A stretch of DNA of 63,262 nucleotides, filler included, from Guillardia theta CCMP2712 (Eukaryota > Protista > Cryptophyta): assembly GCF_000315625.1 (NCBI RefSeq). It is 5 parts of 5 records of this genome, joined end to end, with 100 filler letters (N's around TTAATTAATTAA, not from the genome) between each part and the next. Parts side by side here need not be neighbours in the genome. Positions count along the whole stretch, not along the records: positions 30,337 to 44,017 come from NW_005434312.1; 4 more parts are not named here. One strand, given 5' to 3'. Under the pieces are notes generated by a model that was given only the letters and a program-made list of their open reading frames with translations, did no database searches and was not told where the DNA came from. Position numbers and translations under genes: made by a program. Shown piece after piece: positions 30,293 through 46,630 of the stretch; positions within the stretch are counted from its first letter, which is position 1, and the number at the start of each line of letters is the position of its first letter.

Positions 30293-30639
30293 NNNNNNNN
30301 NNNNNNNNNNNNNNNNNNNNNNNNNNNNNNNNNNNNTAGAAGCAGCAGCTGCTGCCGCAGCAGTGACAAGGGCATCATCAACAATATCAGTAGGAGAAAA
30401 AGGATGCGAAGTAGGAGAGAGGATGGGTTGATAGGAGGATGGCAACTCAGGTGAAAAAGAACCAGAGGATGGGAGACAGATAAGCTGCAATTCACGGAGA
30501 AGAGGCAAGATACTAAAATAAAAAGGAAATGGAGCAGAGGCAAAGGCAGAGGCAAGGCAGCAAGAGCAAGAACAGGAGCATGAGAATGAAGGTCAATCAT
30601 ATTGTTCTTGACTCTTACGGGTACGGTTGTGGTGTTCAG

Positions 30640-31849
30640 GCGATGTTTTCTCTTATCGGCTCACCTTCCTCGCACAAAGATTTCAACTATGTCACTGAGT
30701 TTTTTCGAAACGGTTCTTTGCTGGACGAAAGGCGGATTCAAACATGGGACAAGACAATGCTGCCGGTACAGATCGGCTCAATTTGATACCTCGGTCTGAT
30801 GCTATCTCGTCTTCCAACTCAGATGTTGCTGGGCACCACCGATCTCCTCGATCTGCGTGCAAAGCATGAAGAAGAAAGATTAGACGCGATGCATCTCCTG
30901 ATTCACAGCCTTGCCAATGAGTCTCTGCTGACTGTGGGAGATGTTCACTTGTGCCAATCACAGCATTGACACTTCCACCCTCAGATGCCTAAAATAGATA
31001 TGGATTCCTTCTCCTCTCACGACCCTCTCCTCTCCCTCCAAAGCGCCGTCGATGTCCAGGTTATTCCATGACGATCTTGTCTATGTATTCTCTGATGTGA
31101 GATGATGGGAAGGTTGAAGGAAAAGTCTATGCCATCGCACTCAAACCCATTGGGCTGATCTTTCGCGCTTTGCTCATTCTCCTAGCAACTCACAGGTCCA
31201 GCTTGTTGATTTGATATGCCTGAAGCAAACATGAGTTTTTCCTTCAAGATTGAACGGGGGGCAATTTCATTGTACATTCTGGCATTACCACACACTGAAG
31301 GCTTGCGTATTGTTGTGTTGTTTTGAACTTGATTTCGACAAGCTTCCAATCGCTGTTCCCAGGTTGACATTTGACACAATCAATGTTTAAATCATCTTGC
31401 TTCTTGCACCTCAAAACCTTTTTTCTGCTCTTCTCTCACTCTTGCCTTTCTTTTAGCTTTGCTACAGTCCAAGTTGTGCACCTCTTCCAGAATGTTGTCC
31501 ATGAAGTACTTTACCTGGCTGAGCTTCTTGATATCGCACACCTATTTCCGGAACCAAGCAAAATATTCAGTGCAAGGTTGAATCATGATGTGTTCTGCAG
31601 GTGGTGGTTGTGGTTGTGGTTGTGGTGGTGGTGGATGAGATGATGAACATTGAAGATTGAAACTGTGTTGACCATCATACTTCAGACTGTTTCTACATCT
31701 TGTTTCTCAAGACCAGTCGAGCAGCGGATATCTTGACAGCCTGCTGAAGCAAATACAGCATGATGAGATTGATGTGTTTTTCGATGCCGTGTCAAACATC
31801 TTCAAAGAAGACTTCCAATTCTCCAACGATATCCACATGATTGAAACAG
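30640..31849 (+). CDS. Series of short coding exons, either the helicase N-terminus or the end of the IQ gene
   Basis: AG/GT-bounded segments such as AMFSLIGSPSSHKDFNYVTEFFRNGSLLDERRIQTWDKTMLP, FATVQVVHLFQNVVHEVLYLAELLDIAHLF and LFLHLVSQDQSSSGYLDSLLKQIQHDEIDVFFDAVSNIF. Confidence 0.45.
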
Positions 31850-31920
31850 GTAACTTCATGATTTTATGTTCAGATAGATAGATACTGCATGTCAATATCT
31901 TTGTTTTCTTCTTCGTTATT

Positions 31921-34900
31921 TTGAACTTGTTGGATCAATCTTGTCTCAATTCTGACGATTCTGCCTCTAATGGACGAAATGATTTGAATTTCAAAACAGC
32001 AACTACCAACGACATCTTTGACGAAGACAGTCAGGAAGAAATGTACGACAGCAACACAACTCATCTCAATATGGAGCAGCAGCCTGCAGACACATCTCTT
32101 CCTATCTTGCAGTTCAAAGAAAAGATTCTTCAGGAGATCAACAGCAACACAGTCACATGCATCCAAGGAGAAACAGGATGTGGCAAGAGCTCGATGGTCC
32201 CTCAATTCATCCTCGATGATGCCAGGGCAAGACGACAGAGGGTCAACGTTATTGTATCACAACCACGAAGGCTTGCGGCTGTGGCGCTTGCGAGAAGGGT
32301 TGCGAGTCAAAACAACGAGAAGATTGGAAAAACTATTGGCTATCGTATTGGTCAAGGAGATCACGTTGTGTCCATGGAGACTCAGGTCACTTTCGTGACG
32401 ATAGGATACTTGCTTCACAAGCTCTACCATAACCCTAAAACCTTCTTCAAGAGTTCCCATGTCGTCTTAGATGAGGTGCATGAACGAGGAATGGACTCTG
32501 ATCTCCTGAACCTGCTGATCAAGAAGCTGATGGAGAACAGTAAGTCAAGCACAAAGCTGATCATCATGTCTGCAACCCTACAAGCCAACCTCTTCAGCCA
32601 GTTTTTCACCCCTGTTGGCGAGAAGGTCAGGGATACAATCTTCGTTGGAGCGAAGAGATACCACGTTGATGTTTATTTCCTGGACGAGTGGAAGAATTTT
32701 CACAGATCCTTTATGAATGACAAGAATCTCAATAATCTCTTGGGACAGTTCAAGATTCAAAACAAAGAAAATCAGGGAAACAAGCTGAAACCTGAGGTGA
32801 GAAAGATTGTGATGAAAGCTGCACCCTTTTCTTCCTTATCTCCTTATATTTGTTTTTGATGCAGTTGAACAAAGACTCCTGCACCCTCATAATCAATCTG
32901 CTTGCAAAGATTGTCAAGCCCGACATCTGCATTCTGGTCTTCCTTCCCGGCATCGGCGATATTGAATCCTTGCAGGAAGATATCAGAAGTAGCTCCTTGA
33001 GCTCCCCTCTCCAGATCCTCGTCCTACACTCGTTGGTCTCCCGCGAACAACAGGAAGCAGCGATTCTTCCAGCAACGGCTGGACACTGCAAGCTGATCCT
33101 CTCAACCAACATCGCTGAGAGCTCCATCACCATCCCCGATGTCCTCTACGTCATTGACTCATGCCTGAGCAAGTAGTCATATTGTCCCATATTATCTGAT
33201 CATCATATTGATTCCTCTTTCCTCTTTCTCCTCCTCCTCCTCCACCACCTCCTCCTCATCATCATCATCATCATCGTCATCATCTTCCTCGTCATCGTCA
33301 TCGTCATCGTCATCATCAAACGATCCATCATCAACGTCCCTGTTCTGCTGTTGCTGCTTTTCATGCTTCATGCTTTGCTGTAGTCTTGCGTATCCTGTTG
33401 TTCTGCTTTCCCTATCCTCAGTCTCAGTCATGGTCATACCCTTCTCCCTTTCATCAAATTTTTGTGTTCTTGCTCGTTCTACTCTTTACTCCTCCTCTCA
33501 GGGAAATCCACTTCGACGAGAAAAGGAACATGCCGGCACTGCTCGGGGCATGGTGCTCGCAGTCTTCTGCTAAGCAGCGACAGGGGAGAGCAGGAAGAGT
33601 TGCGCCCGGCTTCGTCTTCCATCTCGTTCCCCGGCACTTTCACGACAATGTCATGCTCCCGTTTGCAGAAGCAGAGATTTCTCGCCTTCCGCTCGAGAAA
33701 ACCATCCTCAAGGTCAAGATCCTCCTCAAGAAGTTTGGCAGGCCTTCAGCTCTGCTTCAGCAGTCCCTTACTCCTCCTCCTCCAGCTCGCTTTGAGCTCG
33801 CAATCAAAGAGCTCTTCAAGGTTGGCGCTTTAATCCGCGAAGAAGAGACTTCACCTGTTACCCAGCTGGGAGTACTTGCCTCTGAACTCCCTGTTGATCT
33901 TGTGCTTGTTAAGCTGCTCGTGCTGGGCATAACCTGCTCCTGCCTCCCCGAAGCCATCGTGATGGCCTCTGCGCTCTCAGTCCAGGACATTTTTGCCATG
34001 CCCTCCTCTCTCTTTGTGAAGGACAAAGCATGCTTCCTCAAGGAGCTTGCTCGCAATTTTAGGAGTCGAGCTGAGCTGGACATGGGGAAGCTGTCCGAGC
34101 CGATCATGTACCTGGAGGCCTACAAGAGGTGGATAATCTCAAAGCGAGGCTCAAATGATGCCTCCAAGCTGGGGCTGAGCTTGACGAGGCTGAGGCAGAT
34201 GGAAACTCTTGCGCTGGATCTTTGTCGGAGGTTCGAGGATCACTTTGCGCAACTGGAGGGGCTGAGGGACGACTCGCTCGACAAGCTCCACCTGCTGCGC
34301 GGCGCAATCATGTCGAGGAAGCGTTGTCAGCCGTCCACCCTGAGCTCCCTCTTTCAGGCAACGGATGATACTCTAAGGTTTGTCCTGGTGGGCAGCTGCT
34401 CGCAGTTGTTCATCAAGGGGTTGAAAATGGACAAGAAAAACTCTGAGATTGCCAGGTCAGGTTTTGACAACGAATGTTCTGTAATGCTCTACAAAGTTCC
34501 ACCTGAGCTGAACAACAGCGATTGCATCGAATCCCTGCTGAAGGTGCTTGACATCAAGGTTGTCAACCATTGGAGTGTTGGGGTGAGCAATGCTGTCATA
34601 CAGCTGAGCAACGACCAAGATCTCCTTTCTGCGCCATCCTCCTCTCAAAGCATCCCAGCTCAACTTGTACAGGACATGAGCTACGAAGTCAAGCTACTGT
34701 GGCAGGTTTACTTTGGCTCTCGCCGCAAGCTCGTGCTTCCCAACCCTCAGCAAGTGACGGCAACAAGGGAGTCGCAGACAGCCACCCTTGGAGGATTGAG
34801 CTCGGACTCGACGATCAGGTGGTTCCTGGAGAAGGAGAAAAAGGTGCTGGTGGAAGACGTCGATGTCGAGAAGGACAATAATGTCTTGAACAAGGCGGAG

Positions 34901-37900
34901 GAGAAGTTCCTTGTCCGGCCCAACTGGCGCTCTCCCCTGTCTGTGGTCGCCGATTTCAACAGAGAGCATGTAGAGCATAAAGCTGTGGCTATGTCCCTCT
35001 TGGGAACGATGAATGAGCAGAATGTGACAGCGACAGGGATGACCTTGCTTCCTAACAACCCCTTCGGAAAGTTGCTCCAGCTGGTGTTCAGCCCGAGGGC
35101 AGACAGGATGTCAATGATAGCCAGCAGCGACGGATCTCAGATGTTCTATTTCAAGATTGGGACAGGAACAATCGACCTCCTTCCGTACTTTATCACCACG
35201 GAAGATTTCGATGCGATCAACTGCATCCGACGATGCATCAGCAGAGCCATCCTGCGCCATCCGGAGAAAACAAGACAAGATATGAAAAAGCTGCTTGTAT
35301 CCTTTCTCACTCACCAGCCTTCAAAATTCGAAGGAAAGAAGAAACCAAAATCTGCTGAATTCCATCTCACTATAGAAGAGACGCAGGAGTACCTTCCACA
35401 GCTCAAGAGGGGAAACAAAATCGACAAGCTAATTTCTACTGACGGGGATATCATCAAAGACAGCGGCCATGTGGGCCCTGGGAACGAGAAGGGGCAGGCC
35501 CAGCACCCCAACGAGGACGTCGACGCGCACGAGGACGCAGGAGCCGCACCATCACAAACTACAGATAAGAAGGAGGACACGGCTGACGTCGACGATGAGA
35601 GTATCGTCAAAGACAGCGGCCATGTGGGCCCTGGGAGCGAGAAGGGACAGGCCCAGCATCCGAACGAGGACGTCGACGCGAACAAGGACGCAGGAGCCGC
35701 ACCATCGTGGACGAAGAAGCTCGCTGCATCGCTTGTTGAGGGGAAGGATGCGATCGTTAGGTTTTGCTGCAAGGAGGAAGGCACGAAGAAGTTAATGGTG
35801 GGCTGTAAACGTGAGCTTCTAAGACTCATCAGACAGGCTGGAGGGATGAGCACAGGGATCAGGGACAACAGCACTGGGGGAGAGGAAGAGAAGGCCCAGC
35901 ACCCCGACGAGGACGTCGACGCGCACGAGGACGCAGGAGCCGCACCATCACAAACTACAGATAAGAAGGAGGACACGGCTGACGTCGACGATAACAGTAT
36001 CGTCAAAGACAGCGGCCATGTGGGCCCTGGGAGCGAGGAAGGGCAGGCCCAGCACCCCGACGAGGACGTCGACGCGCACGAGGACGCAGGAGCCGCACCA
36101 TCGCGGACGGCGGAGGAGACGGGGGAGTACCTTTCTCACGCCAAGGCCACGGCTGACGTCGACAGGACGGTATCTGCCGTCGACCTCGTGGTCAAGCTCC
36201 TGTGCGACGACAGCTTTGACCTACACGCCGACTCGCAGGAGCTGTCGATCCGCCGCGTCTCCTCTGTGTCCGCCGCCTCCTTCACCGTCCACGTGCTCTC
36301 CATAGGGCCTTGCTCGGGCTCGAGCATGAGCCTGTCAGACGCTGTGGAGCAGACGGTGAGGTGGTACACGCGAGCAGCAGGAAGGCGATCTACAAGAGTG
36401 CTGGAGTTTACGTCCCTGCAGACTAAGGAAGAAAAGAAGCTCGTTGCATCGCTTGTTGAGGGGAAGGCTGCGATTGATAGCTTTCGCTGCAAGGAGGAAG
36501 GCACATACAAGTTAATGGTGGGCCATAAACGTGAGCTTCTAAAACTCATCAGAAAGGCTGGAGGGATGAGCACATGGATCAGGGACAACAGCACTGGGGG
36601 CGAGAAGGGGCAGGCCCAGCACCCCGACGAGGACGTCGACGCGCACGAGGACGCAGGAGCCGCGCCATCGCGGACGGCGGAGGAGACAGGGGAGTGCCTT
36701 TCTCACTCCAAGGCCACGGCTGACGTCGACAGGACGGTATCTGCCGTCGACCTCGTGGTCAAGCTCCTGTGCGACGACAGCTTTGACCTACACGCCGACT
36801 CGCAGGAGCTGTCGATCCGCCGCGTCTCCTCTGTGTCCGCCGCCTCCTTCACCGTCCACGTGCTCTCCATAGGGCCTTGCTCGGGCTCGAGCATGAGCCT
36901 GTCAGACGCTGTGGAGCAGACGGTGAGGTGGTACACGCGAGCAGCAGGAGAGGGATCCAAGAGCGTGCTGGAGTTTACGTCCCTGCAGACTAAGCCAGAG
37001 AGGAGACGTGTGCGAAAGCACGGCAAGGGTATCGTGACAGTTGCTAGCTTTCGCTGCAAGGAGCAGGACTCGACGAAGATGATGATCGGGGTACAACCTG
37101 AGTTTGTGAAGCTGGTCAGGATAGCTGGAGGGATCAGCAGGTACGTCAATGTCCGTGTACTCAAGGGCGTCGAAAAGGAACCATTGAAGCGTACAGAGGA
37201 CAAAACTCAGAACAAGCACCAATCCGCAGGAGCCGCGCCATCGCGGACGGCGGAGGAGACAGGGGAGTGCCTTTCTCACGCCAAGGCCACGGCTGACGTC
37301 GACAGGACGGTATCTGCCGTCGACCTCGTGGTCAAGCTCCTGTGCGACGACAGCTTTGACCTACACGCCGACTCGCAGGAGCTGTCGATCCGCCGCGTCT
37401 CCTCTGTGTCCGCCGCCTCCTTCACCGTCCACGTGCTCTCCATAGGGCCTTGCTCGGGCTCGAGCATGAGCCTGTCAGACGCTGTGGAGCAGACGGTGAG
37501 GTGGTACACGCGAGCAGCAGGAAGGCGATCTACAAGAGTGCTGGAGTTTACGTCCCTGCAGACTAAGGAAGAAAAGAAGCTCGTTGCATCGCTTGTTGAG
37601 GGGAAGGCTGCGATTGATAGCTTTCGCTGCAAGGAGGAAGGCACATACAAGTTAATGGTGGGCCATAAACGTGAGCTTCTAAGACTCATCAGAAAGGCTG
37701 GAGGGATGAGCACATGGATCAGGGACAACAGCACTGGGGGCGAGGAAGGGCAGGCCCAGCACCCCGACGAGGACGTCGACGCGCACGAGGACGCAGGAGC
37801 CGCGCCATCGCGGACGGCGGAGGAGACGGGGGAGTACCTTTCTCACGCCAAGGCCACGGCTGACGTCGACAGGACGGTATCTGCCGTCGACCTCGTGGTC

Positions 37901-40900
37901 AAGCTCCTGTGCGACGACAGCTTTGACCTACACGCCGACTCGCAGGAGCTGTCGATCCGCCGCGTCTCCTCTGTGTCCGCCGCCTCCTTCACCGTCCACG
38001 TGCTCTCCATAGGGCCTTGCTCGGGCTCGAGCATGAGCCTGTCAGACGCTGTGGAGCAGACGGTGAGGTGGTACACGCGAGCAGCAGGAGAGGGATCCAA
38101 GAGCGTGCTGGAGTTTACGTCCCTGCAGGCGACGAAGCAGAGGAACCTCGTCTATACGCACTGCATGGGGCGCGTTTGGATGCAGTACTACCGCTGCAAA
38201 GAGGAAGGCACGAAGACTATGATGATCGGCCCGACCCCCTCCTTTGTGACGCTGGTCAGGATAGCTGGAGGGATCAGCAGGTACGTCGCTGATGGTGGGC
38301 ATGGGGGCCCTGGGAGCGAGGAAGGGCAGGCCCAGCACCCCGACGAGGACGTCGACGCGCACGAGGACGCAGAGCCGCACCATCGCGGACGGCGGAGAGA
38401 CGGGGGAGTACCTTTCTCACGCCAAGGCCACGGCTGACGTCGACAGGACGGTATCTGCCGTCGACCTCGTGGTCAAGCTCCTGTGCGACGACAGCTTTGA
38501 CCTACACGCCGACTCGCAGGAGCTATCGATCCGCCGCGTCTCCTCTGTGTCCGCCGCCTCCTTCACCGTCCACGTGCTCTCCATAGGGCCTTGCTCGGGC
38601 TCGAGCATGAGCCTGTCAGACGCTGTGGAGCAGACGGTGAGGTGGTACACGCGAGCAGCAGGAGAGGGATCCAAGAGCGTGCTGGAGTTTACGTCCCTGC
38701 AGGCGACGAAGCAGAGGAACCTCGTCTATACGCACTGCATGGGGCGCGTTTGGATGCAGTACTACCGCTGCAAAGAGGAAGGCACGAAGACTATGATGAT
38801 CGGCCCGACCCCCTCCTTTGTGACGCTGGTCAGGATAGCTGGAGGGATCAGCAGGTACGTCGCGGACGGTGGGCATGGGGGCCCTGGGAGCGAGGAAGGG
38901 CAGGCCCAGCACCCCGACGAGGACGTCGACGCGCACGAGGACGCAGAGCCGCGCCATCGCGGACGGCGGAGGAGACGGGGGAGTACCTTTCTCACGCCAA
39001 GGCCACGGCTGACGTCGACAGGACGGTATCTGCCGTCGACCTCGTGGTCAAGCTCCTGTGCGACGACAGCTTTGACCTACACGCCGACTCGCAGGAGCTA
39101 TCGATCCGCCGCGTCTCCTCTGTGTCCGCCGCCTCCTTCACCGTCCACGTGCTCTCCATAGGGCCTTGCTCGGGCTCGAGCATGAGCCTGTCAGACGCTG
39201 TGGAGCAGACGGTGAGGTGGTACACGCGAGCAGCAGGAGAGGGATCCAAGAGCGTGCTGGAGTTTACGTCCCTGCAGGCGACGAAGCAGAGGAACCTCGT
39301 CTATACGCACTGCATGGGGCGCGTTTGGATGCAGTACTACCGCTGCAAAGAGGAAGGCACGAAGACTATGATGATCGGCCGGATCCTCTCCTTTGTGAAG
39401 CTGGTCAGGATAGCTGGAGGGATCAGCAGGTACGTCGCGGACGGTGGGCATGGGGGCCCTGGGAGCGAGGAAGGGCAGGCCCAGCACCCCGACGAGGACG
39501 TCGACGCGCACGAGGACGCAGGAGCCGCACCATCGCGGACGGCGGAGGAGACGGGGGAGTGCCTTTCTCACGCCAAGGCTACGGCTGACGTCGACAGGAC
39601 GGTATCTGCCGTCGACCTCGTGGTCAAGCTCCTGTGCGACGACAGCTTTGACCTACACGCCGACTCGCAGGAGCTGTCGATCCGCCGCGTCTCCTCTGTG
39701 TCCGCCGCCTGCTTCACCGTCCACGAGCTCTCCATAGGGCCTTGCTCGGGCTCGAGCATGAGCCTGTCAGACGCTGTGGAGCAGACGGTGAGGTGGTACA
39801 CGCGAGCAGCAGGAGAGGGATCCAAGAGCGTGCTGGAGTTTACGTCCCTGCAGGCGACGAAGCAAGAGTGCTGGAGTTTACGTCCCTGCAGACTAAGGAA
39901 GAAAAGAAGCTCGTTGCATCGCTTGTTGAGGGGAAGGCTGCGATTGATAGCTTTCGCTGCAAGGAGGAAGGCACATACAAGTTAATGGTGGGCCATAAAC
40001 GTGANNNNNNNNNNNNNNNNNNNNNNNNNNNNNNNNNNNNNNNNNNNNNNNNNNNNNNNNNNNNNNNNNNNNNNNNNNNNNNNNNNNNNNNNNNNNNNNN
40101 NNNNNNNNNNNNNNNNNNNNNNNNNNNNNNNNNNNNNNNNNNNNNNNNNNNNNNNNNNNNNNNNNNNNNNNNNNNNNNNNNNNNNNNNNNNNNNNNNNNN
40201 NNNNNNNNNNNNNNNNNNNNNNNNNNNNNNNAGCTCCTGTGCGACGACAGCTTTGACCTACACGCCGACTCGCAGGAGCTGTCGATCCGCCGCGTCTCCT
40301 CTGTGTCCGCCGCCTCCTTCACCGTCCACGTGCTCTCCATAGGGCCTTGCTCGGGCTCGAGCATGAGCCTGTCAGACGCTGTGGAGCAGACGGTGAGGTG
40401 GTACACGCGAGCAGCAGGAGAGGGATCCAAGAGCGTGCTGGAGTTTACGTCCCTGCAGGCGACGAAGCAGAGGAACCTCGTCTATACGCACTGCATGGGG
40501 CGCGTTTGGATGCAGTACTACCGCTGCAAAGAGGAAGGCACGAAGACTATGATGATCGGCCGGATCCTCTCCTTTGTGAAGCTGGTCAGGATAGCTGGAG
40601 GGATCAGCAGGTACGTCGCGGACGGTGGGCATGGGGGCCCTGGGAGCGAGGAAGGGCAGGCCCAGCACCCCGACGAGGACGTCGACGCGCACGAGGACGC
40701 AGGAGCCGCACCATCGCGGACGGCGGAGGAGACGGGGGAGTACCTTTCTCACGCCAAGGCCACGGCTGACGTCGACAGGACGGTATCTGCCGTCGACCTC
40801 GTGGTCAAGCTCCTGTGCGACGACAGCTTTGACCTACACGCCGACTCGCAGGAGCTATCGATCCGCCGCGTCTCCTCTGTGTCCGCCGCCTCCTTCACCG

Positions 40901-41946
40901 TCCACGAGCTCTCCATAGGGCCTTGCTCGGGCTCGAGCATGAGCCTGTCAGACGCTGTGGAGCAGACGGTGAGGTGGTACACGCGAGCAGCAGGAGAGGG
41001 ATCCAAGAGCGTGCTGGAGTTTACGTCCCTGCAGGCGACGAAGCAGAGGAACCTCGTCTATACGCACTGCATGGGGCGCGTTTGGATGCAGTACTACCGC
41101 TGCAAAGAGGAAGGCACGAAGACTATGATGATCGGCCCGACCCCCTCCTTTGTGACGCTGGTCAGGATAGCTGGAGGGATCAGCAGGTACGTCGCGGACG
41201 GTGGGCATGGGGGCCCTGGGAGCGAGGAAGGGCAGGCCCAGCACCCCGACGAGGACGTCGACGCGCACGAGGACGCAGGAGCCGCACCATCGCGGACGGC
41301 GGAGGAGACGGGGGAGTGCCTTTCTCACGCCAAGGCTACGGCTGACGTCGACAGGACGGTATCTGCCGTCGACCTCGTGGTCAAGCTCCTGTGCGACGAC
41401 AGCTTTGACCTACACGCCGACTCGCAGGAGCTGTCGATCCGCCGCGTCTCCTCTGTGTCCGCCGCCTGCTTCACCGTCCACGAGCTCTCCATAGGGCCTT
41501 GCTCGGGCTCGAGCATGAGCCTGTCAGACGCTGTGGAGCAGACGGTGAGGTGGTACACGCGAGCAGCAGGAGAGGGATCCAAGAGCGTGCTGGAGTTTAC
41601 GTCCCTGCAGGCGACGAAGCAGAGGAACCTCGTCTATACGCACTGCATGGGGCGCGTTTGGATGCAGTACTACCGCTGCAAAGAGGAAGGCACGAAGACT
41701 ATGATGATCGGCCGGATCCTCTCCTTTGTGACGCTGGTCAGGATAGCTGGAGGGATCAGCAGGTACGTCGCGGACGGTGGGCATGGGGGCCCTGGGAGCG
41801 AGAAGGGGCAGGCCCAGCACCCCGACGAGGACGTCGACGCGCACGAGGACGCAGGAGCCGCGCCATCGCGGACGGCGGAGGAGACGGGGGAGTACCTTTC
41901 TCAGGCCAAGGCCACGGTGTCACATCCCGAGGCTTTACAGGATTGA
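31921..41946 (+). CDS. TDRD9: DEAH/RHA RNA helicase of TDRD9/Spindle-E type with a C-terminal tandem array of ~190-aa modules
   Basis: Motifs I GETGCGKS, Ia QPRRLAA, II DEVH, III SAT, IV FLPG, V TNIAESSITI and VI QRQGRAGR. Introns 32797-32864 and 33173-33501 join in frame. HA2 region: TILKVK...LGVLASELPVD...LVLG...CLPEAIVMASALSVQDIFAMP. The frame runs directly into the repeat array. Three 1-nt deletions (near 38372, 38397 and 38946), a chimeric junction at ~39865 and a gap (40005-40231) interrupt the assembled frame. Confidence 0.85.
35455..41917 (+). repeat. Coding tandem array of 567-576-nt units (at least 10) preceded by partial units
   Basis: Unit starts (GGAGCCGC) at ~36089, 36656, 37229, 37796, 38372, 38946, 39521, [gap], 40702, 41278 and 41854 (truncated); a 153-nt sub-repeat and a partial cassette occupy 35455-36088. 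Confidence 0.97.
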
Positions 41947-42498
41947 TCTTCAACGGAGCTCAACAAGAACTTGCTTTGGAATTTCTCTGCTAAGCGAAAA
42001 GCAGTGTGACAGGAGGAGATCTATCTCTCTTTATTCTCACACAACAAACAAAACAAACCAACACACACTGATGTGGCACAAACGCGCGAGGAAGGAGACA
42101 GGAGTACCCGTCTCTTGGCTGAGGAAAGTAGGGGTGATCTCTCCTTGGAAGTTGACAAGCTTTCCTCCTTAGATGTTGAAAATCCCGTCAGCCCCTCGAG
42201 CGGCAACCTTGCTCTCTCGCAGGGAAGAGAACCCCGTCCTCGCATGCCAGCAGGCTGCTTCCAACGGGTTGTACTCCACAAGACTCATCCGTCATCTTCA
42301 GCTGGTAGGCCACCACGGGTAGACGGTTCCTGCAACGACGACCTCCAGAGGGGTCCTTTACAGCAGATTCACACTCTGCTTGTTGCCAAGAATCACGGTC
42401 AGGAGAGAGCAGCGCTTGACGCCAAGTACAAGGATCGTGTCGATCAGGCGCCATAGTAACTGCAGTAGCTACTGCTGATAGATGCCTGACTCCTGCAG

Positions 42499-42615
42499 GC
42501 GTTCCACTTCGGCGTGCCCGTCGGCGACTCCGCCCTGCGCAGCCGCACGGTCAGGGACTTCCTGGAGCGGAACGTCCCGCGCTGGTCGTCGATGCGCTGC
42601 TCGACCGACGCGGAG
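42499..42615 (+). other. Isolated GC3-rich exon-like segment
   Basis: CTGAC..CTGCAG acceptor, 117 nt reading AFHFGVPVGDSALRSRTVRDFLERNVPRWSSMRCSTDAE, then a GTGCGG donor; no partner exons seen. Confidence 0.4.
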
Positions 42616-42849
42616 GTGCGGCGGGGGCACGGCAGCGAGTGCTTCTTCCTTCAACGCTGAGCTTCCGTCACTCCACTGACGAGACCTAATTACCGAACTC
42701 GGAAACTTAGCACTGTAACGGCCGCCCAGCCCGACTGCCACCTGGGCAGCGCCGAACCTGTCAGTCCCATCCGGTCACTCTGTGCTACTTTTGCTTCATG
42801 AAACCACTGACTGATCGGAACCTCTTGAACTGCTCCCTCAGCAACTTTG

Positions 42850-43747
42850 CTATTCCTTGTCGCATGAGGGGTATGTCCTTCTGTCCAAAGTTGTCGATGC
42901 CCTCTCCAGCAGCAACTTTCTTCCTGCATTGGCACCTGCTGATATACCATGAGCGATGCACCTGCTCATATACAACATCAGCGTACCTGTCCTTGTCTCA
43001 TAACTTGCTTGTCGTATGTCCTCCCTAACGTATCCTCTGCCTGCCATTTGCCGCGTAGGTACTTCCAGAAGCATGTATGCCCCACACAGGGCAACCCGGT
43101 CGTAAGCCATGTACTTTTCCGTTGGTTGTCAGGTTCCACATACCTTCTATTCTGGTTCAAAACGCCGATACCGGTCATTCCGTTGGGGTCATACAATCTG
43201 CATCCCCAAATGGTCGTCACTCGTGGTTGGTGTACAAGTAATTCGTCTCTCTCCCATGTAGGCAATTAACAAACACCAGTGTCCGGGTTTAAACGCGGGA
43301 ATAAAACATGTACCCCTCTCTGCGCATGCGTTTCCAATAACGCAAAAGCTCTTCATATCCTCCTGTCGCAGTCACGGTGTCCAATGCCGCGCCACTGGTA
43401 TGTAGCAACTCCAGATTGGGATAGAAATAAGTAGAGACAAAGTCAATGTTCCGAGGCTTCATGTGCCTGGTACAACCAGTGTCCCGGATGCAGTCAGATC
43501 TCCACTTAACCAGATGCAGCCAACTCTCCACCACGTCGCAGCTGATACATTTAGAAATATCACTTACATCCTGAATGATCGCTTCGGACAGGTTAGGGAT
43601 AGCATGGATGATAATCTTTCCCCCTGTGAAAGTCATAGCGTTTCCCAGAAACACATCACGCATATACTTGCATTGATATACCATCATTATTTCCTCCCTT
43701 GTCAAACAATTCGATATCCATATTCTTCTTGCTGCGCTTCTTCGCAA
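42850..43747 (-). pseudogene. Degenerate Ulp1/SENP (peptidase C48) domain, possibly from a DNA transposon
   Basis: Motifs in the expected order across frameshifts: CISCDVVESWLHLV, IDFVSTYFYPNL, GGYEELLRYWKR, CFIPAFKPGHWCLLIAY (HW at ~43276-43281), RLYDPNG, RQ...GTLMLYMSRCIAHG. Confidence 0.6.
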
Positions 43748-46630
43748 TCGTCATGACTTCGCGTTGCAGTCTTCTTTGCTTTCCTTTCCTTGGGCACCTC
43801 GACACGTTTTCTTGCGATTCCCACAGATAGTGTAAAGCTCACTGTCATCGAGATCTTCCGGACCCGGATCATCCTCCCCGGGTGTGGCAGGAGGAGGAGA
43901 CAAAGGGTCTGTAGGGTTTGAACCAAACTCGCGTGAGAAAGGAACATGCCCCGGTATCATGTGCGTGCATCATCAGGCTTCATCCCTGTACGCAGCGCTG
44001 TGACCTCCGGCTGCGGANNNNNNNNNNNNNNNNNNNNNNNNNNNNNNNNNNNNNNNNNNNNTTAATTAATTAANNNNNNNNNNNNNNNNNNNNNNNNNNN
44101 NNNNNNNNNNNNNNNNNGGAACACCACGGGAGACGACTCGCGCAGCGGAGAGAGCATAGGAAGCTGCAGTTCCGAAGCCTTCTTGATCGCCTTGACACAG
44201 TTTGTTACAGACTGTGCAAGAACAAAACACGCAGAAGATAACAATCATCTCGATTTTACCTCATGAGGAGCAAGCTTCTTGTTGAACAGCACTGTGTGAA
44301 TATTCGCCCATAGCTCCAGCAAAGTTCCCCGACGAGGCCGCCTGTTGTGCCCATGAGCGATGAGTTGCAAGGGCTACAACAGCACGAACTTGTTCTTGAA
44401 AGAATCGGCTTTCTTCGTCTCATCGTAGGGCAGCCCTTCGTCAAAGTCCTTCACCTTTCAACAACTTTCAGTTTGCCGTGCTCACGGGAAGTATATCACA
44501 CCTCCCCGTTCCTCCGCAATGAGCCGAATCCCGGTGTCAGAGGAGCATGAGGCAGGAACGACGGATACTTTCCTTCAACGCTCCTCTGCCCGATCAAGGG
44601 AGGAGCAAATAATCACATCAACAAGCAAGTACAAGCATCGACTCACCATGAGGTGGTTCGGTTCGAAGATAGAAATGGATGCTGGTTTCTGATACAACTG
44701 TCACCAGAAACACCAAAAGAACACAAGTCTCAAGTCACCAACCTCTGGATGCTTTGCACTCATCTCTGTCATTTCTCAGCAACGCTCAAGGTCCTCCAAC
44801 AATTCTGCCGTCAAACCCTTACAAGCTCCCGTTCCGATCCATCCCACTGTCCTGGATTGCACAGTCAGAAGGGGATTGCTGGCGTCCACAGGGCGCCAGA
44901 TGAAGCTAGCAAGCGCGCATCTCTCTCAAAATAACAAAATCAATCTTATCGCATTCTTGGTATGAAAAGAACACAGTTCATCCCATTGTTAATACAGGCA
45001 AAGGGTACGAATCGAACAGAGCTACGAGAACCAAGAACAAGTTGAAAGCATGCTGAAATATGAAGCAGATGCCCTGTATCCAATCTTGGTCTATCGAGTG
45101 CAGTTTGTCTCTCTACCCTATTCTAGAACTGCTCCACTCATGACTCCTTTCCCGCAAGATGGTACTTTCATTCCTACAACAACTTGGGTCCAAGTTGACA
45201 GGGGTTGATTAATATGTTCCACGCGGACGAGGCGTGTGCAATATAAGTTGCCACTGACTCCATGTATCAATTTCATCATCTTACATTGCAACTGCAGCTT
45301 GCTGCCCATCCTAAAGCTCCCTCACCCACTTACAACCCTTCCCTCGTTTCTCCTTGACTCCCCTCCCAACCATGCACAGTATCTCCACTGCCCATCAACT
45401 CTCCGTCTCCACTATCGCCTGATGCAGCATCTGTTCTGCATGTTGCCTCCTGCTGCTGTATCCCTCCCATAGCATGCGCCCGCCTCTCCTCGCCTCCTGT
45501 ATCGTTGCTCCTCCCCTGCGGCCACAGTATTGCCATGGAAAGAAAGCCCAGAGGGGGCGGGGGTGGAAGGTACCACTGGGTGGGTCCTTCAAATGGCAAT
45601 ACGGGGGTGGGTCACCCTATGTTGTGATGAAATACCCCTCCACAATTCTGTAAAAACACCGGTACATGTTACAGTATTCTGGGCACCACCTACCTCTTGT
45701 ACCACCACCCTCCAAGTAGAGGTCCACCCACCACCCACCACCCTGTAAAATCTTTGGGGTCGACTCGCACATGAACCAGCACTCCTTACCCCAGGTTGAC
45801 TCGCAAATTGTGGTACTTTAATATTACTCAAAAAATACATGGTACTAGATCTTTTGTAGAGGAAACAACCCAAGAACGGCGCACCCCTTACTTCACAACA
45901 CCCACCCACCCACCCACCTGCCCACCCACCCATTCATCCCATTAGCTGAAGGGGGGGCCAATAGGGGTAAAGATAGGAAATTACCGAGGGACTACCCACC
46001 ATTCGACAGTACCCCACCCTATCGGCTCTCATCCGTGGTCACAAGCCCAGGCCCCCAATCCTCTCCTCGCCAAATAAGTAAAAATATCTGTAGTCACTGA
46101 AGCCTCAGTCACTGGCCCGGGCCCGACGGGCCCGAGCTCCGAAGTACCGTACTGTCAAGCCTCCTCGACTCTCCTTATTGTCATCATACCAGAAACATTA
46201 CTCAAAGGGCTCCGGTACTTCTTTACTAGCTTTGAGTTACTCAAAGTTAATAATAAGTCGATCAATCTGACTGTTGGGCTCCGCTCAGTTATTATTATAG
46301 TCAACTTCTTGGTACTGTCTATCAACTTTTAGAGGTGTGCGCGTGAGGCGATTAAGTTATTTGTTTGTACCACTGCCAGCCAGCGGTAGTACTCCCGGTA
46401 CACACAAAATCCGACGGTACGTTGGGTACTTTACTTATACACAAAGCGATGCAAAACCTCAACCCTATGCGTACTTCCACCAACGTTTAAAACTATTTCT
46501 TTCTTTCCCCCCTCCGCTTGCTGCGGCGTAATTGGACGGTCGCAGGGGAGTCGTGGGGCCCACCTACCTTCACTGACAGCAGCGCCATGGCGTGTATGAG
46601 CATCCTCGATCATGTTACAAGATAGCGATC

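What the first reader, a model, noticed from the sequence alone, without database searches (positions are those of the whole stretch)
35455..41946. RNA-silencing-type helicase fused to a tandem array of constant + variable modules
Seen: the helicase frame runs into at least 10 units of 567-576 nt. In each unit the first ~95 aa (GAAPSRTAEETGEYLSHAKATADVDRTVSAVDLVVKLLCDDSF...DAVEQTVRWYTRAAG) is almost invariant at DNA level. The segment after VLEFTSLQ is one of three strongly diverged but alignable versions: A (TKEEKKLVASLVEGKAAIDSFRCKEEGTYKLMVG), B (TKPERRRVRKHGKGIVTVASFRCKEQDSTKMMIG) and C (ATKQRNLVYTHCMGRVWMQYYRCKEEGTKTMMIG). The order is partial A', A, B, A, C, C, C, C/A hybrid, gap, C, C, C. 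Inference: a homogenised scaffold carrying exchangeable specificity cassettes on an RNA helicase suggests a recombination-diversified RNA-recognition array, e.g. for transposon or virus defence. I know of no described helicase with this architecture.
Basis: partly seen in the sequence, partly recalled or inferred. Interest (0 to 1): 0.9.

Follow-up and report, generated by a model that had tools for sequence, protein, structure and literature searches.

The report
Helicase tail domain amplified in tandem
In the alga Guillardia theta, an RNA helicase of the Spindle-E/TDRD9 type carries at least ten tandem copies of its own, otherwise single, tail domain; half of each copy is kept almost identical and the other half exists in three old versions, an unannotated but probably real curiosity whose far end is marred by frame breaks and an assembly gap.

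Summary
The piece is a 13,681-nt scaffold of Guillardia theta CCMP2712. It holds a DEAH/RHA helicase gene whose last exon stays open from 33502 into an array of 567-576-nt units.

Between cassette types the first 108 codons differ at dS 0.02-0.04. The next 53 codons differ at dS 0.7-1.1, with dN/dS 0.4-0.6.

The unit is not a foreign module. Two cryptophyte homologues (one from Hanusia phi) carry one such domain, and in one of them it follows directly on the same helicase C-terminus. So this is a tandem amplification of the helicase's own tail domain, with concerted evolution confined to its first half.

The helicase core is closest to Spindle-E/TDRD9 but has no Tudor domain. The variable half may be a divergent R3H-like fold; that lead is weak.

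Caveats:
- Three 1-nt deletions and a 38-nt duplication break the frame after unit 4.
- The gap keeps register.
- K-mer depth supports about 8-15 copies.
- RNA evidence is thin.

A "recombination-diversified RNA-recognition/defence array" is not supported: there are only three old cassettes, and they are under purifying selection.

The parts
32071..32808 (+). Helicase exon 1 (RecA1; motif I GETGCGKS, motif II DEVH)
   Evidence: Pfam DEAD, E 3e-11. Matches the annotated partial model GUITHDRAFT_83326 = P0050. Boundaries read.
32865..33172 (+). Helicase exon 2 (RecA2)
   Evidence: Pfam Helicase_C, E 5e-10. The junctions KI|LNK and LSK|EIH are given by P0050. Introns lie at 32809-32864 and 33173-33501.
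33502..35451 (+). Start of the last exon: motif VI (QRQGRAGR), HA2, and about 430 aa of lineage-specific C-terminal region. It ends in EETQEYLPQLK (about 35375-35407), a remnant of the start of an ancestral unit.
   Evidence: Pfam HA2_C, E 2e-7. TDRD9 is the best hit at 35% identity. The region aligns to P0041 residues 1-190. Contigs of runs X1, X3 and X4 are colinear from 34100 to 35453-35540.
35452..36075 (+). Degenerate head of the array: four 153-nt short units (linker plus the first ~25 aa of a unit) and a partial A-type cassette, A' (35702-35870). All are in frame with the helicase.
   Evidence: Repeat families D7, D9 and D10; translation. A' against A gives Sd 3, Nd 14. A contig of run X4 lacks 35454-35606, one short unit.
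36076..38356 (+). Units u1 (A), u2 (B), u3 (A) and u4 (C), in frame with the helicase. The open frame ends at 38437.
38357..39507 (+). Units u5 and u6 (both C). 1-nt deletions at 38371/72, 38396/97 and 38945/46 put u5 out of frame and bring u6 back in.
39508..40004 (+). Unit u7: the constant half and a C-type start, then a 38-nt duplication (39830-39867) rejoining into an A-type cassette. It is cut by the gap.
40005..40231 (.). Assembly gap of 227 N. This equals the minimal missing sequence (A tail plus 119 nt of constant head), so register and frame are kept.
40232..41840 (+). Units u8 (5'-truncated by the gap), u9 and u10, all C type.
41841..41946 (+). Partial unit u11 running into a unique tail (VSHPEALQD) and the TGA stop at 41944-41946.
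   Evidence: RNA-seq reads of X24 and contigs of X1 and X3 carry the u11-specific letter and the tail sequence TGTCACATCCCGAGGCTTT....

Best explanation
**What it is.** The array is a lineage-specific tandem amplification of the helicase's own C-terminal accessory domain. That domain is about 160 aa plus an acidic linker of about 30 aa. The gene is a Spindle-E/TDRD9-like DEAH helicase of Guillardia theta.

**How it arose (inferred).**
- Unequal crossing-over multiplied the unit to roughly 10-15 copies.
- Continuing exchange or gene conversion keeps the first ~108 codons and most linkers nearly identical.
- The last ~53 codons fell into three old sequence classes (A, B, C). These are too diverged to be homogenised across classes, and they are still held under protein-level constraint.
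- The C class has expanded most recently.

**What the product would be (inferred).** A helicase with a long, beads-on-a-string C-terminal tail of repeated folded domains separated by acidic disordered linkers. That would be a multivalent binding platform, analogous in logic to the Tudor domain of TDRD9 and to multi-Tudor scaffolds.

**The variable half (weak lead).** It may be a divergent R3H-like beta-alpha-beta-beta-alpha-beta module, a fold used for nucleic-acid binding or oligomerisation. Its putative binding helix is the most variable stretch.

**Shown:** the repeat anatomy, its fusion to the helicase frame, homology to a single-copy tail domain in relatives, the mosaic divergence, and exchange between units.

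**Inferred:** translation of the whole array, multivalent binding, and the R3H-like fold.
For: **Anatomy and order:**

**Same exon and frame as the helicase:**. The exon structure is confirmed by the annotated partial model P0050.

**Homologues:** only two real ones were found among 1.84 billion representatives.
- P0041 has the helicase C-terminus, one unit and a stop on contig L001.
- P0042, from Hanusia phi, has one unit.
- The helicase end in the window still carries the unit's opening motif EETQEYLPQLK.

**Divergence:**
- Constant half: dS 0.024-0.036 between types.
- Variable half: dS 0.70-1.08, dN/dS 0.41-0.57.
- Unit against L001: dN/dS 0.40 (constant half) and 0.17-0.67 (variable half), so it is a constrained protein domain.
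- Cassette types are as far from each other (34-53% identity) as from P0041/P0042 (36-45%).

**Exchange between units:** all four site combinations occur at columns 56/221 and 171/221; B and C share identical tracts; u10 is a recombinant C subtype.

**Copy number from k-mer depth:**
- Run X4 (probably DNA): helicase 59.6 against constant half 474.9 (8x), C cassette 397, A cassette 134.
- Run X3: 579 against 8939 (15x), C 4972, A 1903, B 1142.

**Transcription:** X24 RNA reads, all in one orientation, carry the u10 linker variant and the u11-to-tail junction.

**Helicase type:** Spindle-E 9nhs_G scores 143.8 bits against 122 for the next chain. TDRD9 scores 276 bits against 240-244 for DHX29/DHX57-like proteins.

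**R3H lead:**
- Pfam PF01424 is the only family hit for P0041:260-345 (E 0.01).
- ESM feature neighbours include R3H clusters at 0.79.
- P0041 has R-K-F-V-H at the start of the cassette.
- The low-confidence AF2 model shows beta-alpha-beta-beta-alpha-beta for residues 103-164.
Against: - The frame is broken after u4 by three 1-nt deletions and a 38-nt duplication. I could not show whether these are sequencing errors or real.
- The scaffold is small (13.7 kb) and has a gap inside the array.
- RNA support is 50 short reads, apparently 3'-biased. They do not link the helicase and the array in one molecule. Runs X1 and X3 are only guessed to be RNA.
- P0041 and P0042 are only 35-46% identical to the unit, although Hanusia is a close relative of Guillardia. 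They may therefore be paralogues rather than orthologues, and 'single copy in relatives' is not a strict ancestral-state inference.
- The fold is unknown: AF2 pLDDT is 41-43 and Foldseek found nothing.
- R3H is below Pfam's threshold (16.3 against 26.8 bits) and was found for one homologue only. PDB profile searches found no R3H chain. The window's own cassettes lack the R-x-x-x-H pair.
Confidence: 0.55

Rival explanations
1. The array is a recombination-diversified recognition device: a homogenised scaffold carries exchangeable specificity cassettes that give the silencing-type helicase a repertoire of RNA targets, for transposon or virus defence.
For: - The helicase is nearest to Spindle-E/TDRD9.
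- There is a sharp constant/variable boundary.
- There is evidence of exchange between units, and a C/A chimera.
- The most variable 20 codons coincide with the putative R3H helix and evolve almost neutrally (pN/pS 0.64-0.90).
- Within the C type, the PTP/RIL subtypes differ by three adjacent non-synonymous changes and no synonymous one.
- Runs differ in the short-unit count and perhaps in the presence of B.
Against: - There are only three cassette classes, each internally 97-100% identical.
- The classes are old (dS 0.7-1.1), with dN/dS below 1.
- No reservoir of silent cassettes is seen in the piece.
- RNA binding is untested, and the R-x-x-x-H pair is absent from A, B and C.
- The chimera sits next to an assembly gap and breaks the frame, as a mis-join would.
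Confidence: 0.12
2. The frame breaks are real. The protein ends at 38437 after A' and four full units. u5-u11 are a recently duplicated, untranslated or decaying extension that sits in the 3' UTR.
For: - Three 1-nt deletions and a 38-nt duplication are present in the assembly.
- No read or contig was shown to correct them (tables 3-4).
- RNA reads at the far end are compatible with a long 3' UTR.
Against: - Every distal unit keeps an intact unit-length open frame and is 98-100% identical to proximal units.
- The three deletions are all GG to G, lie within 575 nt of each other and sum to -3.
- The duplication abuts the gap. Both patterns look like consensus or assembly errors in a collapsed repeat.
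- The natural-looking end (partial unit, unique 9-aa tail, stop) is at 41946.
Confidence: 0.2
3. Assembly artefact. The array is over-expanded or mis-joined from reads of one to three units, or from allelic or paralogous copies elsewhere.
For: A small unplaced scaffold, a gap inside the array, a chimeric unit at the gap edge, frame-breaking single-base errors.
Against: - Independent runs give a k-mer depth of the constant half 6-15 times that of the adjoining single-copy helicase. The cassette depths add up to that figure: X4 gives A 2.3 + C 6.7 against 8.0; X3 gives A 3.3 + B 2.0 + C 8.6 against 15.4.
- Units carry distinct combinations of variants.
- If anything, the assembly under-counts units.
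Confidence: 0.05

Closest known systems
Spindle-E / TDRD9 (DEAH helicase of the piRNA pathway)
   Same: It is the best-scoring characterised relative of both the RecA1 part (PDB 9nhs_G, 143.8 bits) and the motif VI-HA2 part (TDRD9, 35% identity, E 1e-32). It also has an accessory binding domain C-terminal to the helicase/HA2 region.
   Different: No Tudor domain is detectable. In its place stands an undescribed domain, repeated 10 or more times. Orthology is not established: the margin over DHX36/DHX29/DHX57 is modest, and for the HA2 part alone DHX36 scores equally.
YTHDC2 and other helicases carrying an R3H domain
   Same: A DEAH helicase, similar to DHX30, DHX9 and TDRD9, that is decorated with an R3H domain. 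[quoted passage not shown] The variable half of the unit gives a weak R3H signal.
   Different: In YTHDC2 the R3H is single and N-terminal; here the candidate module is C-terminal and repeated. That paper found no YTHDC2 architecture in Cryptophyta. The R3H match is below threshold, and the window's cassettes lack the R-x-x-x-H pair.
Multi-Tudor scaffold proteins (from general knowledge; not tested here)
   Same: The logic of multivalency: many copies of one binding domain, strung on linkers, in the small-RNA/helicase context.
   Different: A different domain. Those copies are old and diverged, not 98-100% identical at DNA level, and they are not fused to a helicase in such numbers.
Tandem-repeat coding arrays under concerted evolution (general class)
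   Same: Near-identity of repeats at DNA level, copy-number differences between samples, mosaic variant patterns, and conversion tracts that stop where divergence is high.
   Different: Here the repeat is a whole folded domain of about 190 aa on an enzyme, and homogenisation covers only part of the unit. That leaves three deep cassette lineages inside one array.

Membership tests
DEAH/RHA (DExH) helicases | RecA1 and RecA2 domains with motifs I (GxxGxGKS/T), II (DExH) and VI (QRxGRAGR) | tested here: met
   Pfam DEAD E 3e-11 and Helicase_C E 5e-10. GETGCGKS, DEVH and QRQGRAGR were read.
DEAH/RHA (DExH) helicases | HA2 (winged-helix plus ratchet) after the core | tested here: met
   HA2_C E 1.9e-7, above threshold; HA2_N weak.
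DEAH/RHA (DExH) helicases | OB-fold (OB_NTP_bind) after HA2 | tested here: not met
   No PF07717 hit at E <= 10 in 33521-35455. The region may be too diverged to detect; TDRD9 hits P0001 and P0002 also lack that Pfam call.
Spindle-E / TDRD9 | Helicase core closer to SpnE/TDRD9 than to other DEAH subfamilies | tested here: inconclusive
   Best PDB hit for RecA1 is Spindle-E, 143.8 against 122 bits. TDRD9 is best among the fetched proteins, 276 against 244 bits. For the HA2 part, DHX36 scores 78.4 and SpnE 77.4. No phylogeny was made.
Spindle-E / TDRD9 | C-terminal (extended) Tudor domain | tested here: not met
   No PF00567 in any part. hhalign of the unit profile against TDRD9 gives probability 0.2%.
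R3H domain (PF01424) | Score above the family threshold | tested here: not met
   Only P0041:260-345 matches, at E 0.01 and 16.3 bits against a cut-off of 26.8. The A, B and C cassettes and P0042 give no hit. No R3H chain appeared in the PDB searches.
R3H domain (PF01424) | Conserved Arg-x-x-x-His pair | tested here: not met
   P0041 has R-K-F-V-H. At the same columns C has R-N-L-V-Y, B has R-R-R-V-R, A has K-K-L-V-A and P0042 has N-D-L-V-S.
R3H domain (PF01424) | beta-alpha-beta-beta-alpha-beta fold | tested here: inconclusive
   The AF2 model shows that order for residues 103-164, but at pLDDT 40-55. The second model differs. Foldseek found nothing.
Tandem array under partial concerted evolution | Paralogous repeats far more alike than their age implies, in one part only | tested here: met
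   dS 0.024-0.036 (constant half) against 0.70-1.08 (variable half) between types.
Tandem array under partial concerted evolution | Evidence of exchange between units | tested here: met
   Four-gamete combinations at columns 56/221 and 171/221; B/C identical tracts; a recombinant C subtype in u10. Recurrent mutation is not excluded.
Diversifying / hypervariable cassette systems | Many variants, with an excess of non-synonymous change in the variable part | tested here: not met
   Three classes only. dN/dS 0.41-0.57 overall, and pN/pS 0.64-0.90 in the most variable 20 codons.

The most novel reading that the evidence does not exclude
The whole array is translated. It gives a Spindle-E-like helicase a tail of 10-15 nucleic-acid-binding (R3H-like) modules. 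Three anciently diverged binding-helix variants are kept distinct by selection, while the rest of each unit is continually homogenised. This would be a combinatorial, copy-number-variable RNA-recognition platform acting in small-RNA or transposon control in a cryptophyte, an architecture not described for any helicase.
Probability: 0.12. Interest if true: 0.8.

Novelty: new variant of a known kind. Interest (0 to 1): 0.45.

Why it matters
If the array is translated, it would be an unusual way of decorating a DEAH helicase: ten or more near-identical copies of a lineage-specific tail domain, in the position where TDRD9 has its Tudor domain.

It is also a clean natural example of concerted evolution that stops in the middle of a protein domain. 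That makes it useful for studying conversion-tract limits and GC-biased conversion. GC3 is 0.80 in the constant half and 0.83 in the abundant C cassette, against 0.55 in the rarer A cassette.

Practically, it shows that the public gene model GUITHDRAFT_83326 is cut short. More than 2,500 codons of likely coding sequence are unannotated.

It does not yet open a long-standing question. The function of the domain is unknown, and the distal half of the array needs re-sequencing.

Tried and rejected
- **TRF** missed the array because its longest period is 500.
- **Structure prediction** of the unit, with 3-row and 5-row alignments, gave pLDDT 43 and 41. I ran no further fold searches because the models are too poor.
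- **Weak repeat-driven matches** were read and rejected as short-motif coincidences summed over repeats, with no single stretch significant: a 6,973-aa bacterial Ig-repeat protein, Sel1-repeat proteins and the designed 'Pizza' propellers. The same applies to Pfam Par3_HAL_N, Ig_7 and DUF3435.
- **Divergent Tudor domain:** rejected for now.
- **An intron at the donor-like AGGTACGT in B and C units:** rejected. The codons (R)YV are conserved with P0042's KKYV, and every tested acceptor (49, 55 and 92 nt) would break the frame (own reading).
- **Metagenome scans** for the unit, by protein pattern and by an exact 24-mer, found nothing.
- **ESM Atlas** search with the window's unit gave no usable hit.
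- **Paper searches** found nothing on this gene or architecture.
- **Downstream ORFs** at 42073-43747 have no Pfam match.
- **Complex prediction** was not used: no binding claim is made.
Full report
**What the piece is**

A protein search with the helicase C-terminal region returned, at 100% identity, 'hypothetical protein GUITHDRAFT_83326, partial [Guillardia theta CCMP2712]' (P0050, 513 aa). It sits on a contig of 13,681 nt, exactly the length of the piece 30337-44017.

P0050 fixes the exon structure:
- exon 1: 32071-32808
- intron: 32809-32864
- exon 2: 32865-33172
- intron: 33173-33501
- a last exon from 33502

The public model is cut off inside HA2. Everything from about 33980 onward, including the whole array, is unannotated.

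**The helicase**

Pfam finds DEAD (E 3e-11), Helicase_C (E 5e-10) and HA2_C (E 2e-7). Motifs GETGCGKS, DEVH and QRQGRAGR are visible in the translations.

- Among solved structures, the RecA1 part matches Spindle-E best: 9nhs_G scores 143.8 bits, and the next chain, RNA helicase A, scores 122.
- The motif VI-HA2 part matches DHX36 and Spindle-E equally, at 78 and 77 bits.
- Among named proteins, TDRD9 is best: E 9e-22 in the large search, 35% identity over 249 aa. By BLAST it scores 276 bits against 240-244 for DHX29 and DHX57-like proteins.

'RNA-silencing-type helicase' is thus a fair description of the nearest relatives, but orthology is not shown. The defining Tudor domain is absent.

**The array**

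The repeat search finds 10 in-register copies with spacings of 567-576 nt.

| Element | Type or content | Note |
|---|---|---|
| four 153-nt short units, around A' | linker plus first ~25 aa of a unit | all within 35452-36094 |
| A' (35702-35870) | partial A cassette | between the short units |
| u1 | A | |
| u2 | B | |
| u3 | A | |
| u4-u6 | C | |
| u7 | C/A chimera | cut by the gap |
| gap | 227 N | |
| u8-u10 | C | |
| u11 | partial unit, unique tail VSHPEALQD | TGA at 41944-41946 |

All of 33502-38437 is one open frame, so the helicase C-terminus, the degenerate head of the array and u1-u4 are colinear.

**Frame and gap**

- Three single-base losses, each GG to G, lie at 38371/72, 38396/97 and 38945/46. 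They put u5 into another frame and return u6 to the original one.
- A 38-nt duplication at 39830-39867 shifts the frame again, immediately before the gap. In it a C-type cassette start is rejoined to the A-type sequence through the microhomology CA(A)GAG.
- As asked, I tested the gap first. The left flank ends at offset 459 of an A unit and the right flank begins at offset 119 of a unit. The minimal fill is 227 nt, identical to the N run. Register and frame are kept as written, and the frame 39742-41946 reads through. What lies in the gap is unknown.
- Each distal unit is intact within its own frame and 98-100% identical to proximal ones.
- The three deletions cluster and sum to -3. I therefore think consensus errors are more likely than real lesions, but I could not show this.

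**What the unit is**

It has no Pfam family. A profile of the A, B and C units was scored against 1.84 billion representative proteins. It found only two real relatives.

- P0041 (355 aa) lies on a JGI transcript-like contig, L001. Its first 170 residues align with the window's helicase C-terminus. One unit and a stop follow directly.
- P0042 (199 aa) is a Hanusia phi protein from EukProt, with one unit.
- More distant fragments, P0048 and P0049, keep the opening motifs (E..S.DYLPQ ... LLC..F) after the same helicase region.

The window's helicase end still carries EETQEYLPQLK, the opening motif of a unit, just before the array starts.

So the unit is the helicase's own C-terminal accessory domain, multiplied here. 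One caveat: P0041 and P0042 are only 46% and 35% identical to the unit, although Hanusia is close to Guillardia. They may be paralogues.

**Constant against variable**

Nei-Gojobori estimates:

| Comparison | Codons | dS | dN/dS |
|---|---|---|---|
| Between types, first half | 108 | 0.024-0.036 | |
| Between types, second half | 53 | 0.70-1.08 | 0.41-0.57 |
| Unit against L001, first half | 106 | | 0.40 |
| Unit against L001, second half | 53 | | 0.17-0.67 |

- The unit is therefore a constrained protein domain.
- Cassette types are as far from each other (34-53% identity) as from P0041 and P0042 (36-45%). A small tree does not resolve them as one clade.
- The most variable 20 codons have pN/pS 0.64-0.90, which is relaxed rather than positive selection.
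- Exchange between units is indicated in three ways: all four site combinations occur at alignment columns 56/221 and 171/221; B and C share identical tracts inside the variable half; and the C subtype of u10 is a recombinant.
- GC3 is 0.80 in the constant half and 0.83 in the abundant C cassette, against 0.55 in A and 0.54-0.69 in the helicase. This is compatible with GC-biased conversion, but it is only suggestive.

**Independent data**

- Contigs of three runs are colinear with the window from 34100 across the helicase/array junction, to 35540 (X1), 35488 (X3) and 35453 (X4).
- In X4, which by size looks like DNA:

| Segment | Depth | Relative to helicase |
|---|---|---|
| helicase | 59.6 | 1x |
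| constant half | 474.9 | 8.0x |
| C cassette | 397 | 6.7x |
| A cassette | 134 | 2.3x |

- In X3:

| Segment | Depth | Relative to helicase |
|---|---|---|
| helicase | 579 | 1x |
| constant half | 8939 | 15.4x |
| C cassette | 4972 | 8.6x |
| A cassette | 1903 | 3.3x |
| B cassette | 1142 | 2.0x |

- In both runs the cassette depths add up to about the constant-half depth. The array is therefore not an over-expansion of 1-3 units, and the gap may hide more units.
- X4's contig skips 35454-35606, one in-frame short unit.
- X1 and X4 show no depth on the B cassette. The tool warns that holes prove nothing.
- The one certain RNA run, X24 (about 6% sampled), laid 50 short reads, all with the first mate on the + strand.
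  - They sit on the linker and unit-start segments.
  - They carry the u10 linker variant (38895 and 38897) and the u11-specific letter (36139 C>G).
  - Their loose ends read TGTCACATCCCGAGGCTTT, the unique tail.
  - So the 3' end of the array is transcribed in one orientation. This run does not show linkage to the helicase in one RNA.

**Fold and function**

- AF2 models were poor, at pLDDT 43 and 41, and Foldseek found nothing.
- Two weak, partly independent leads point to R3H for the variable half.
  - Pfam PF01424 is the only family hit for P0041:260-345, at E 0.01 and 16.3 bits, below the 26.8 cut-off.
  - R3H clusters are among the nearest ESM feature neighbours, at 0.79, below the 0.9 level.
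- P0041 has R-K-F-V-H at the start of the cassette. At the same columns C has R...Y, B has R...R and A has K...A.
- The first AF2 model shows beta-alpha-beta-beta-alpha-beta for that part.
- PDB profile searches did not find R3H chains.
- I file this as inconclusive.

**Verdict**

The most likely account is a recent tandem amplification of the helicase's own tail domain by unequal crossing-over. Concerted evolution is confined to the first half of the unit, and three old cassette lineages persist under purifying selection. If fully translated, the product would be a helicase with a multivalent, beads-on-a-string tail.

It is weakened by the small number, the age and the constraint of the cassettes.

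The distal half of the array needs re-sequencing before any claim about the full protein.

Noticed in passing
window 32071-33980 versus 33980-41946: The public gene model GUITHDRAFT_83326 (P0050, 513 aa, 'partial') stops inside HA2. The open frame continues for more than 1,400 codons to 38437, and with the distal units to 41946. All of this is unannotated.
   Followed up: partly
P0041 residues 154-171 versus P0042 residues 1-18: The two homologues are identical over MKQLLCSLIEREPLKMED and then drop abruptly to about 60-68% identity through the unit. This looks like two unit versions attached to the same upstream sequence: paralogues, alternative 3' exons, or a two-unit array in a Hanusia-like organism.
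   Followed up: no
window 35454-35606: A contig of run X4 joins 35453 to 35607, skipping exactly one 153-nt (51-aa) short unit in frame. This is a copy-number difference between the sample and the assembly.
   Followed up: no
window 36960-37215 (B cassette): Runs X1 and X4 (label 'organism A') show no contig depth on the only B cassette, whereas X3 ('organism B') shows about 2x the helicase depth. This could be a culture or strain difference, or a filtering hole.
   Followed up: no
window 38846-38857, 39421-39432 and equivalents (alignment A1 columns 490-508): C-type units come in two subtypes, PTPSFVT and RILSFVK. They differ by second-position changes in three adjacent codons, all non-synonymous (Sd 0, Nd 4). 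u10 (RILSFVT) is a recombinant of the two.
   Followed up: partly
window 33256-33318 and 31600-31632: A (TCA)21 microsatellite lies inside the second helicase intron. A (GGT/TGT) hexamer/dodecamer repeat lies upstream of exon 1. X4's contig appears to end at the former.
   Followed up: no
L001 1410-4034: On the contig that carries the homologue P0041, a second gene follows on the same strand only about 340 nt after the stop. It is 874 aa, with Pfam BIR, C2 and TM_HPP. This is odd for a single transcript, so the contig may be genomic or chimeric.
   Followed up: no
window 40005-40231: The N run (227) equals to the base the sequence needed to complete the A tail and the next constant head. The gap length therefore looks derived from the repeat register rather than being an arbitrary estimate.
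   Followed up: yes
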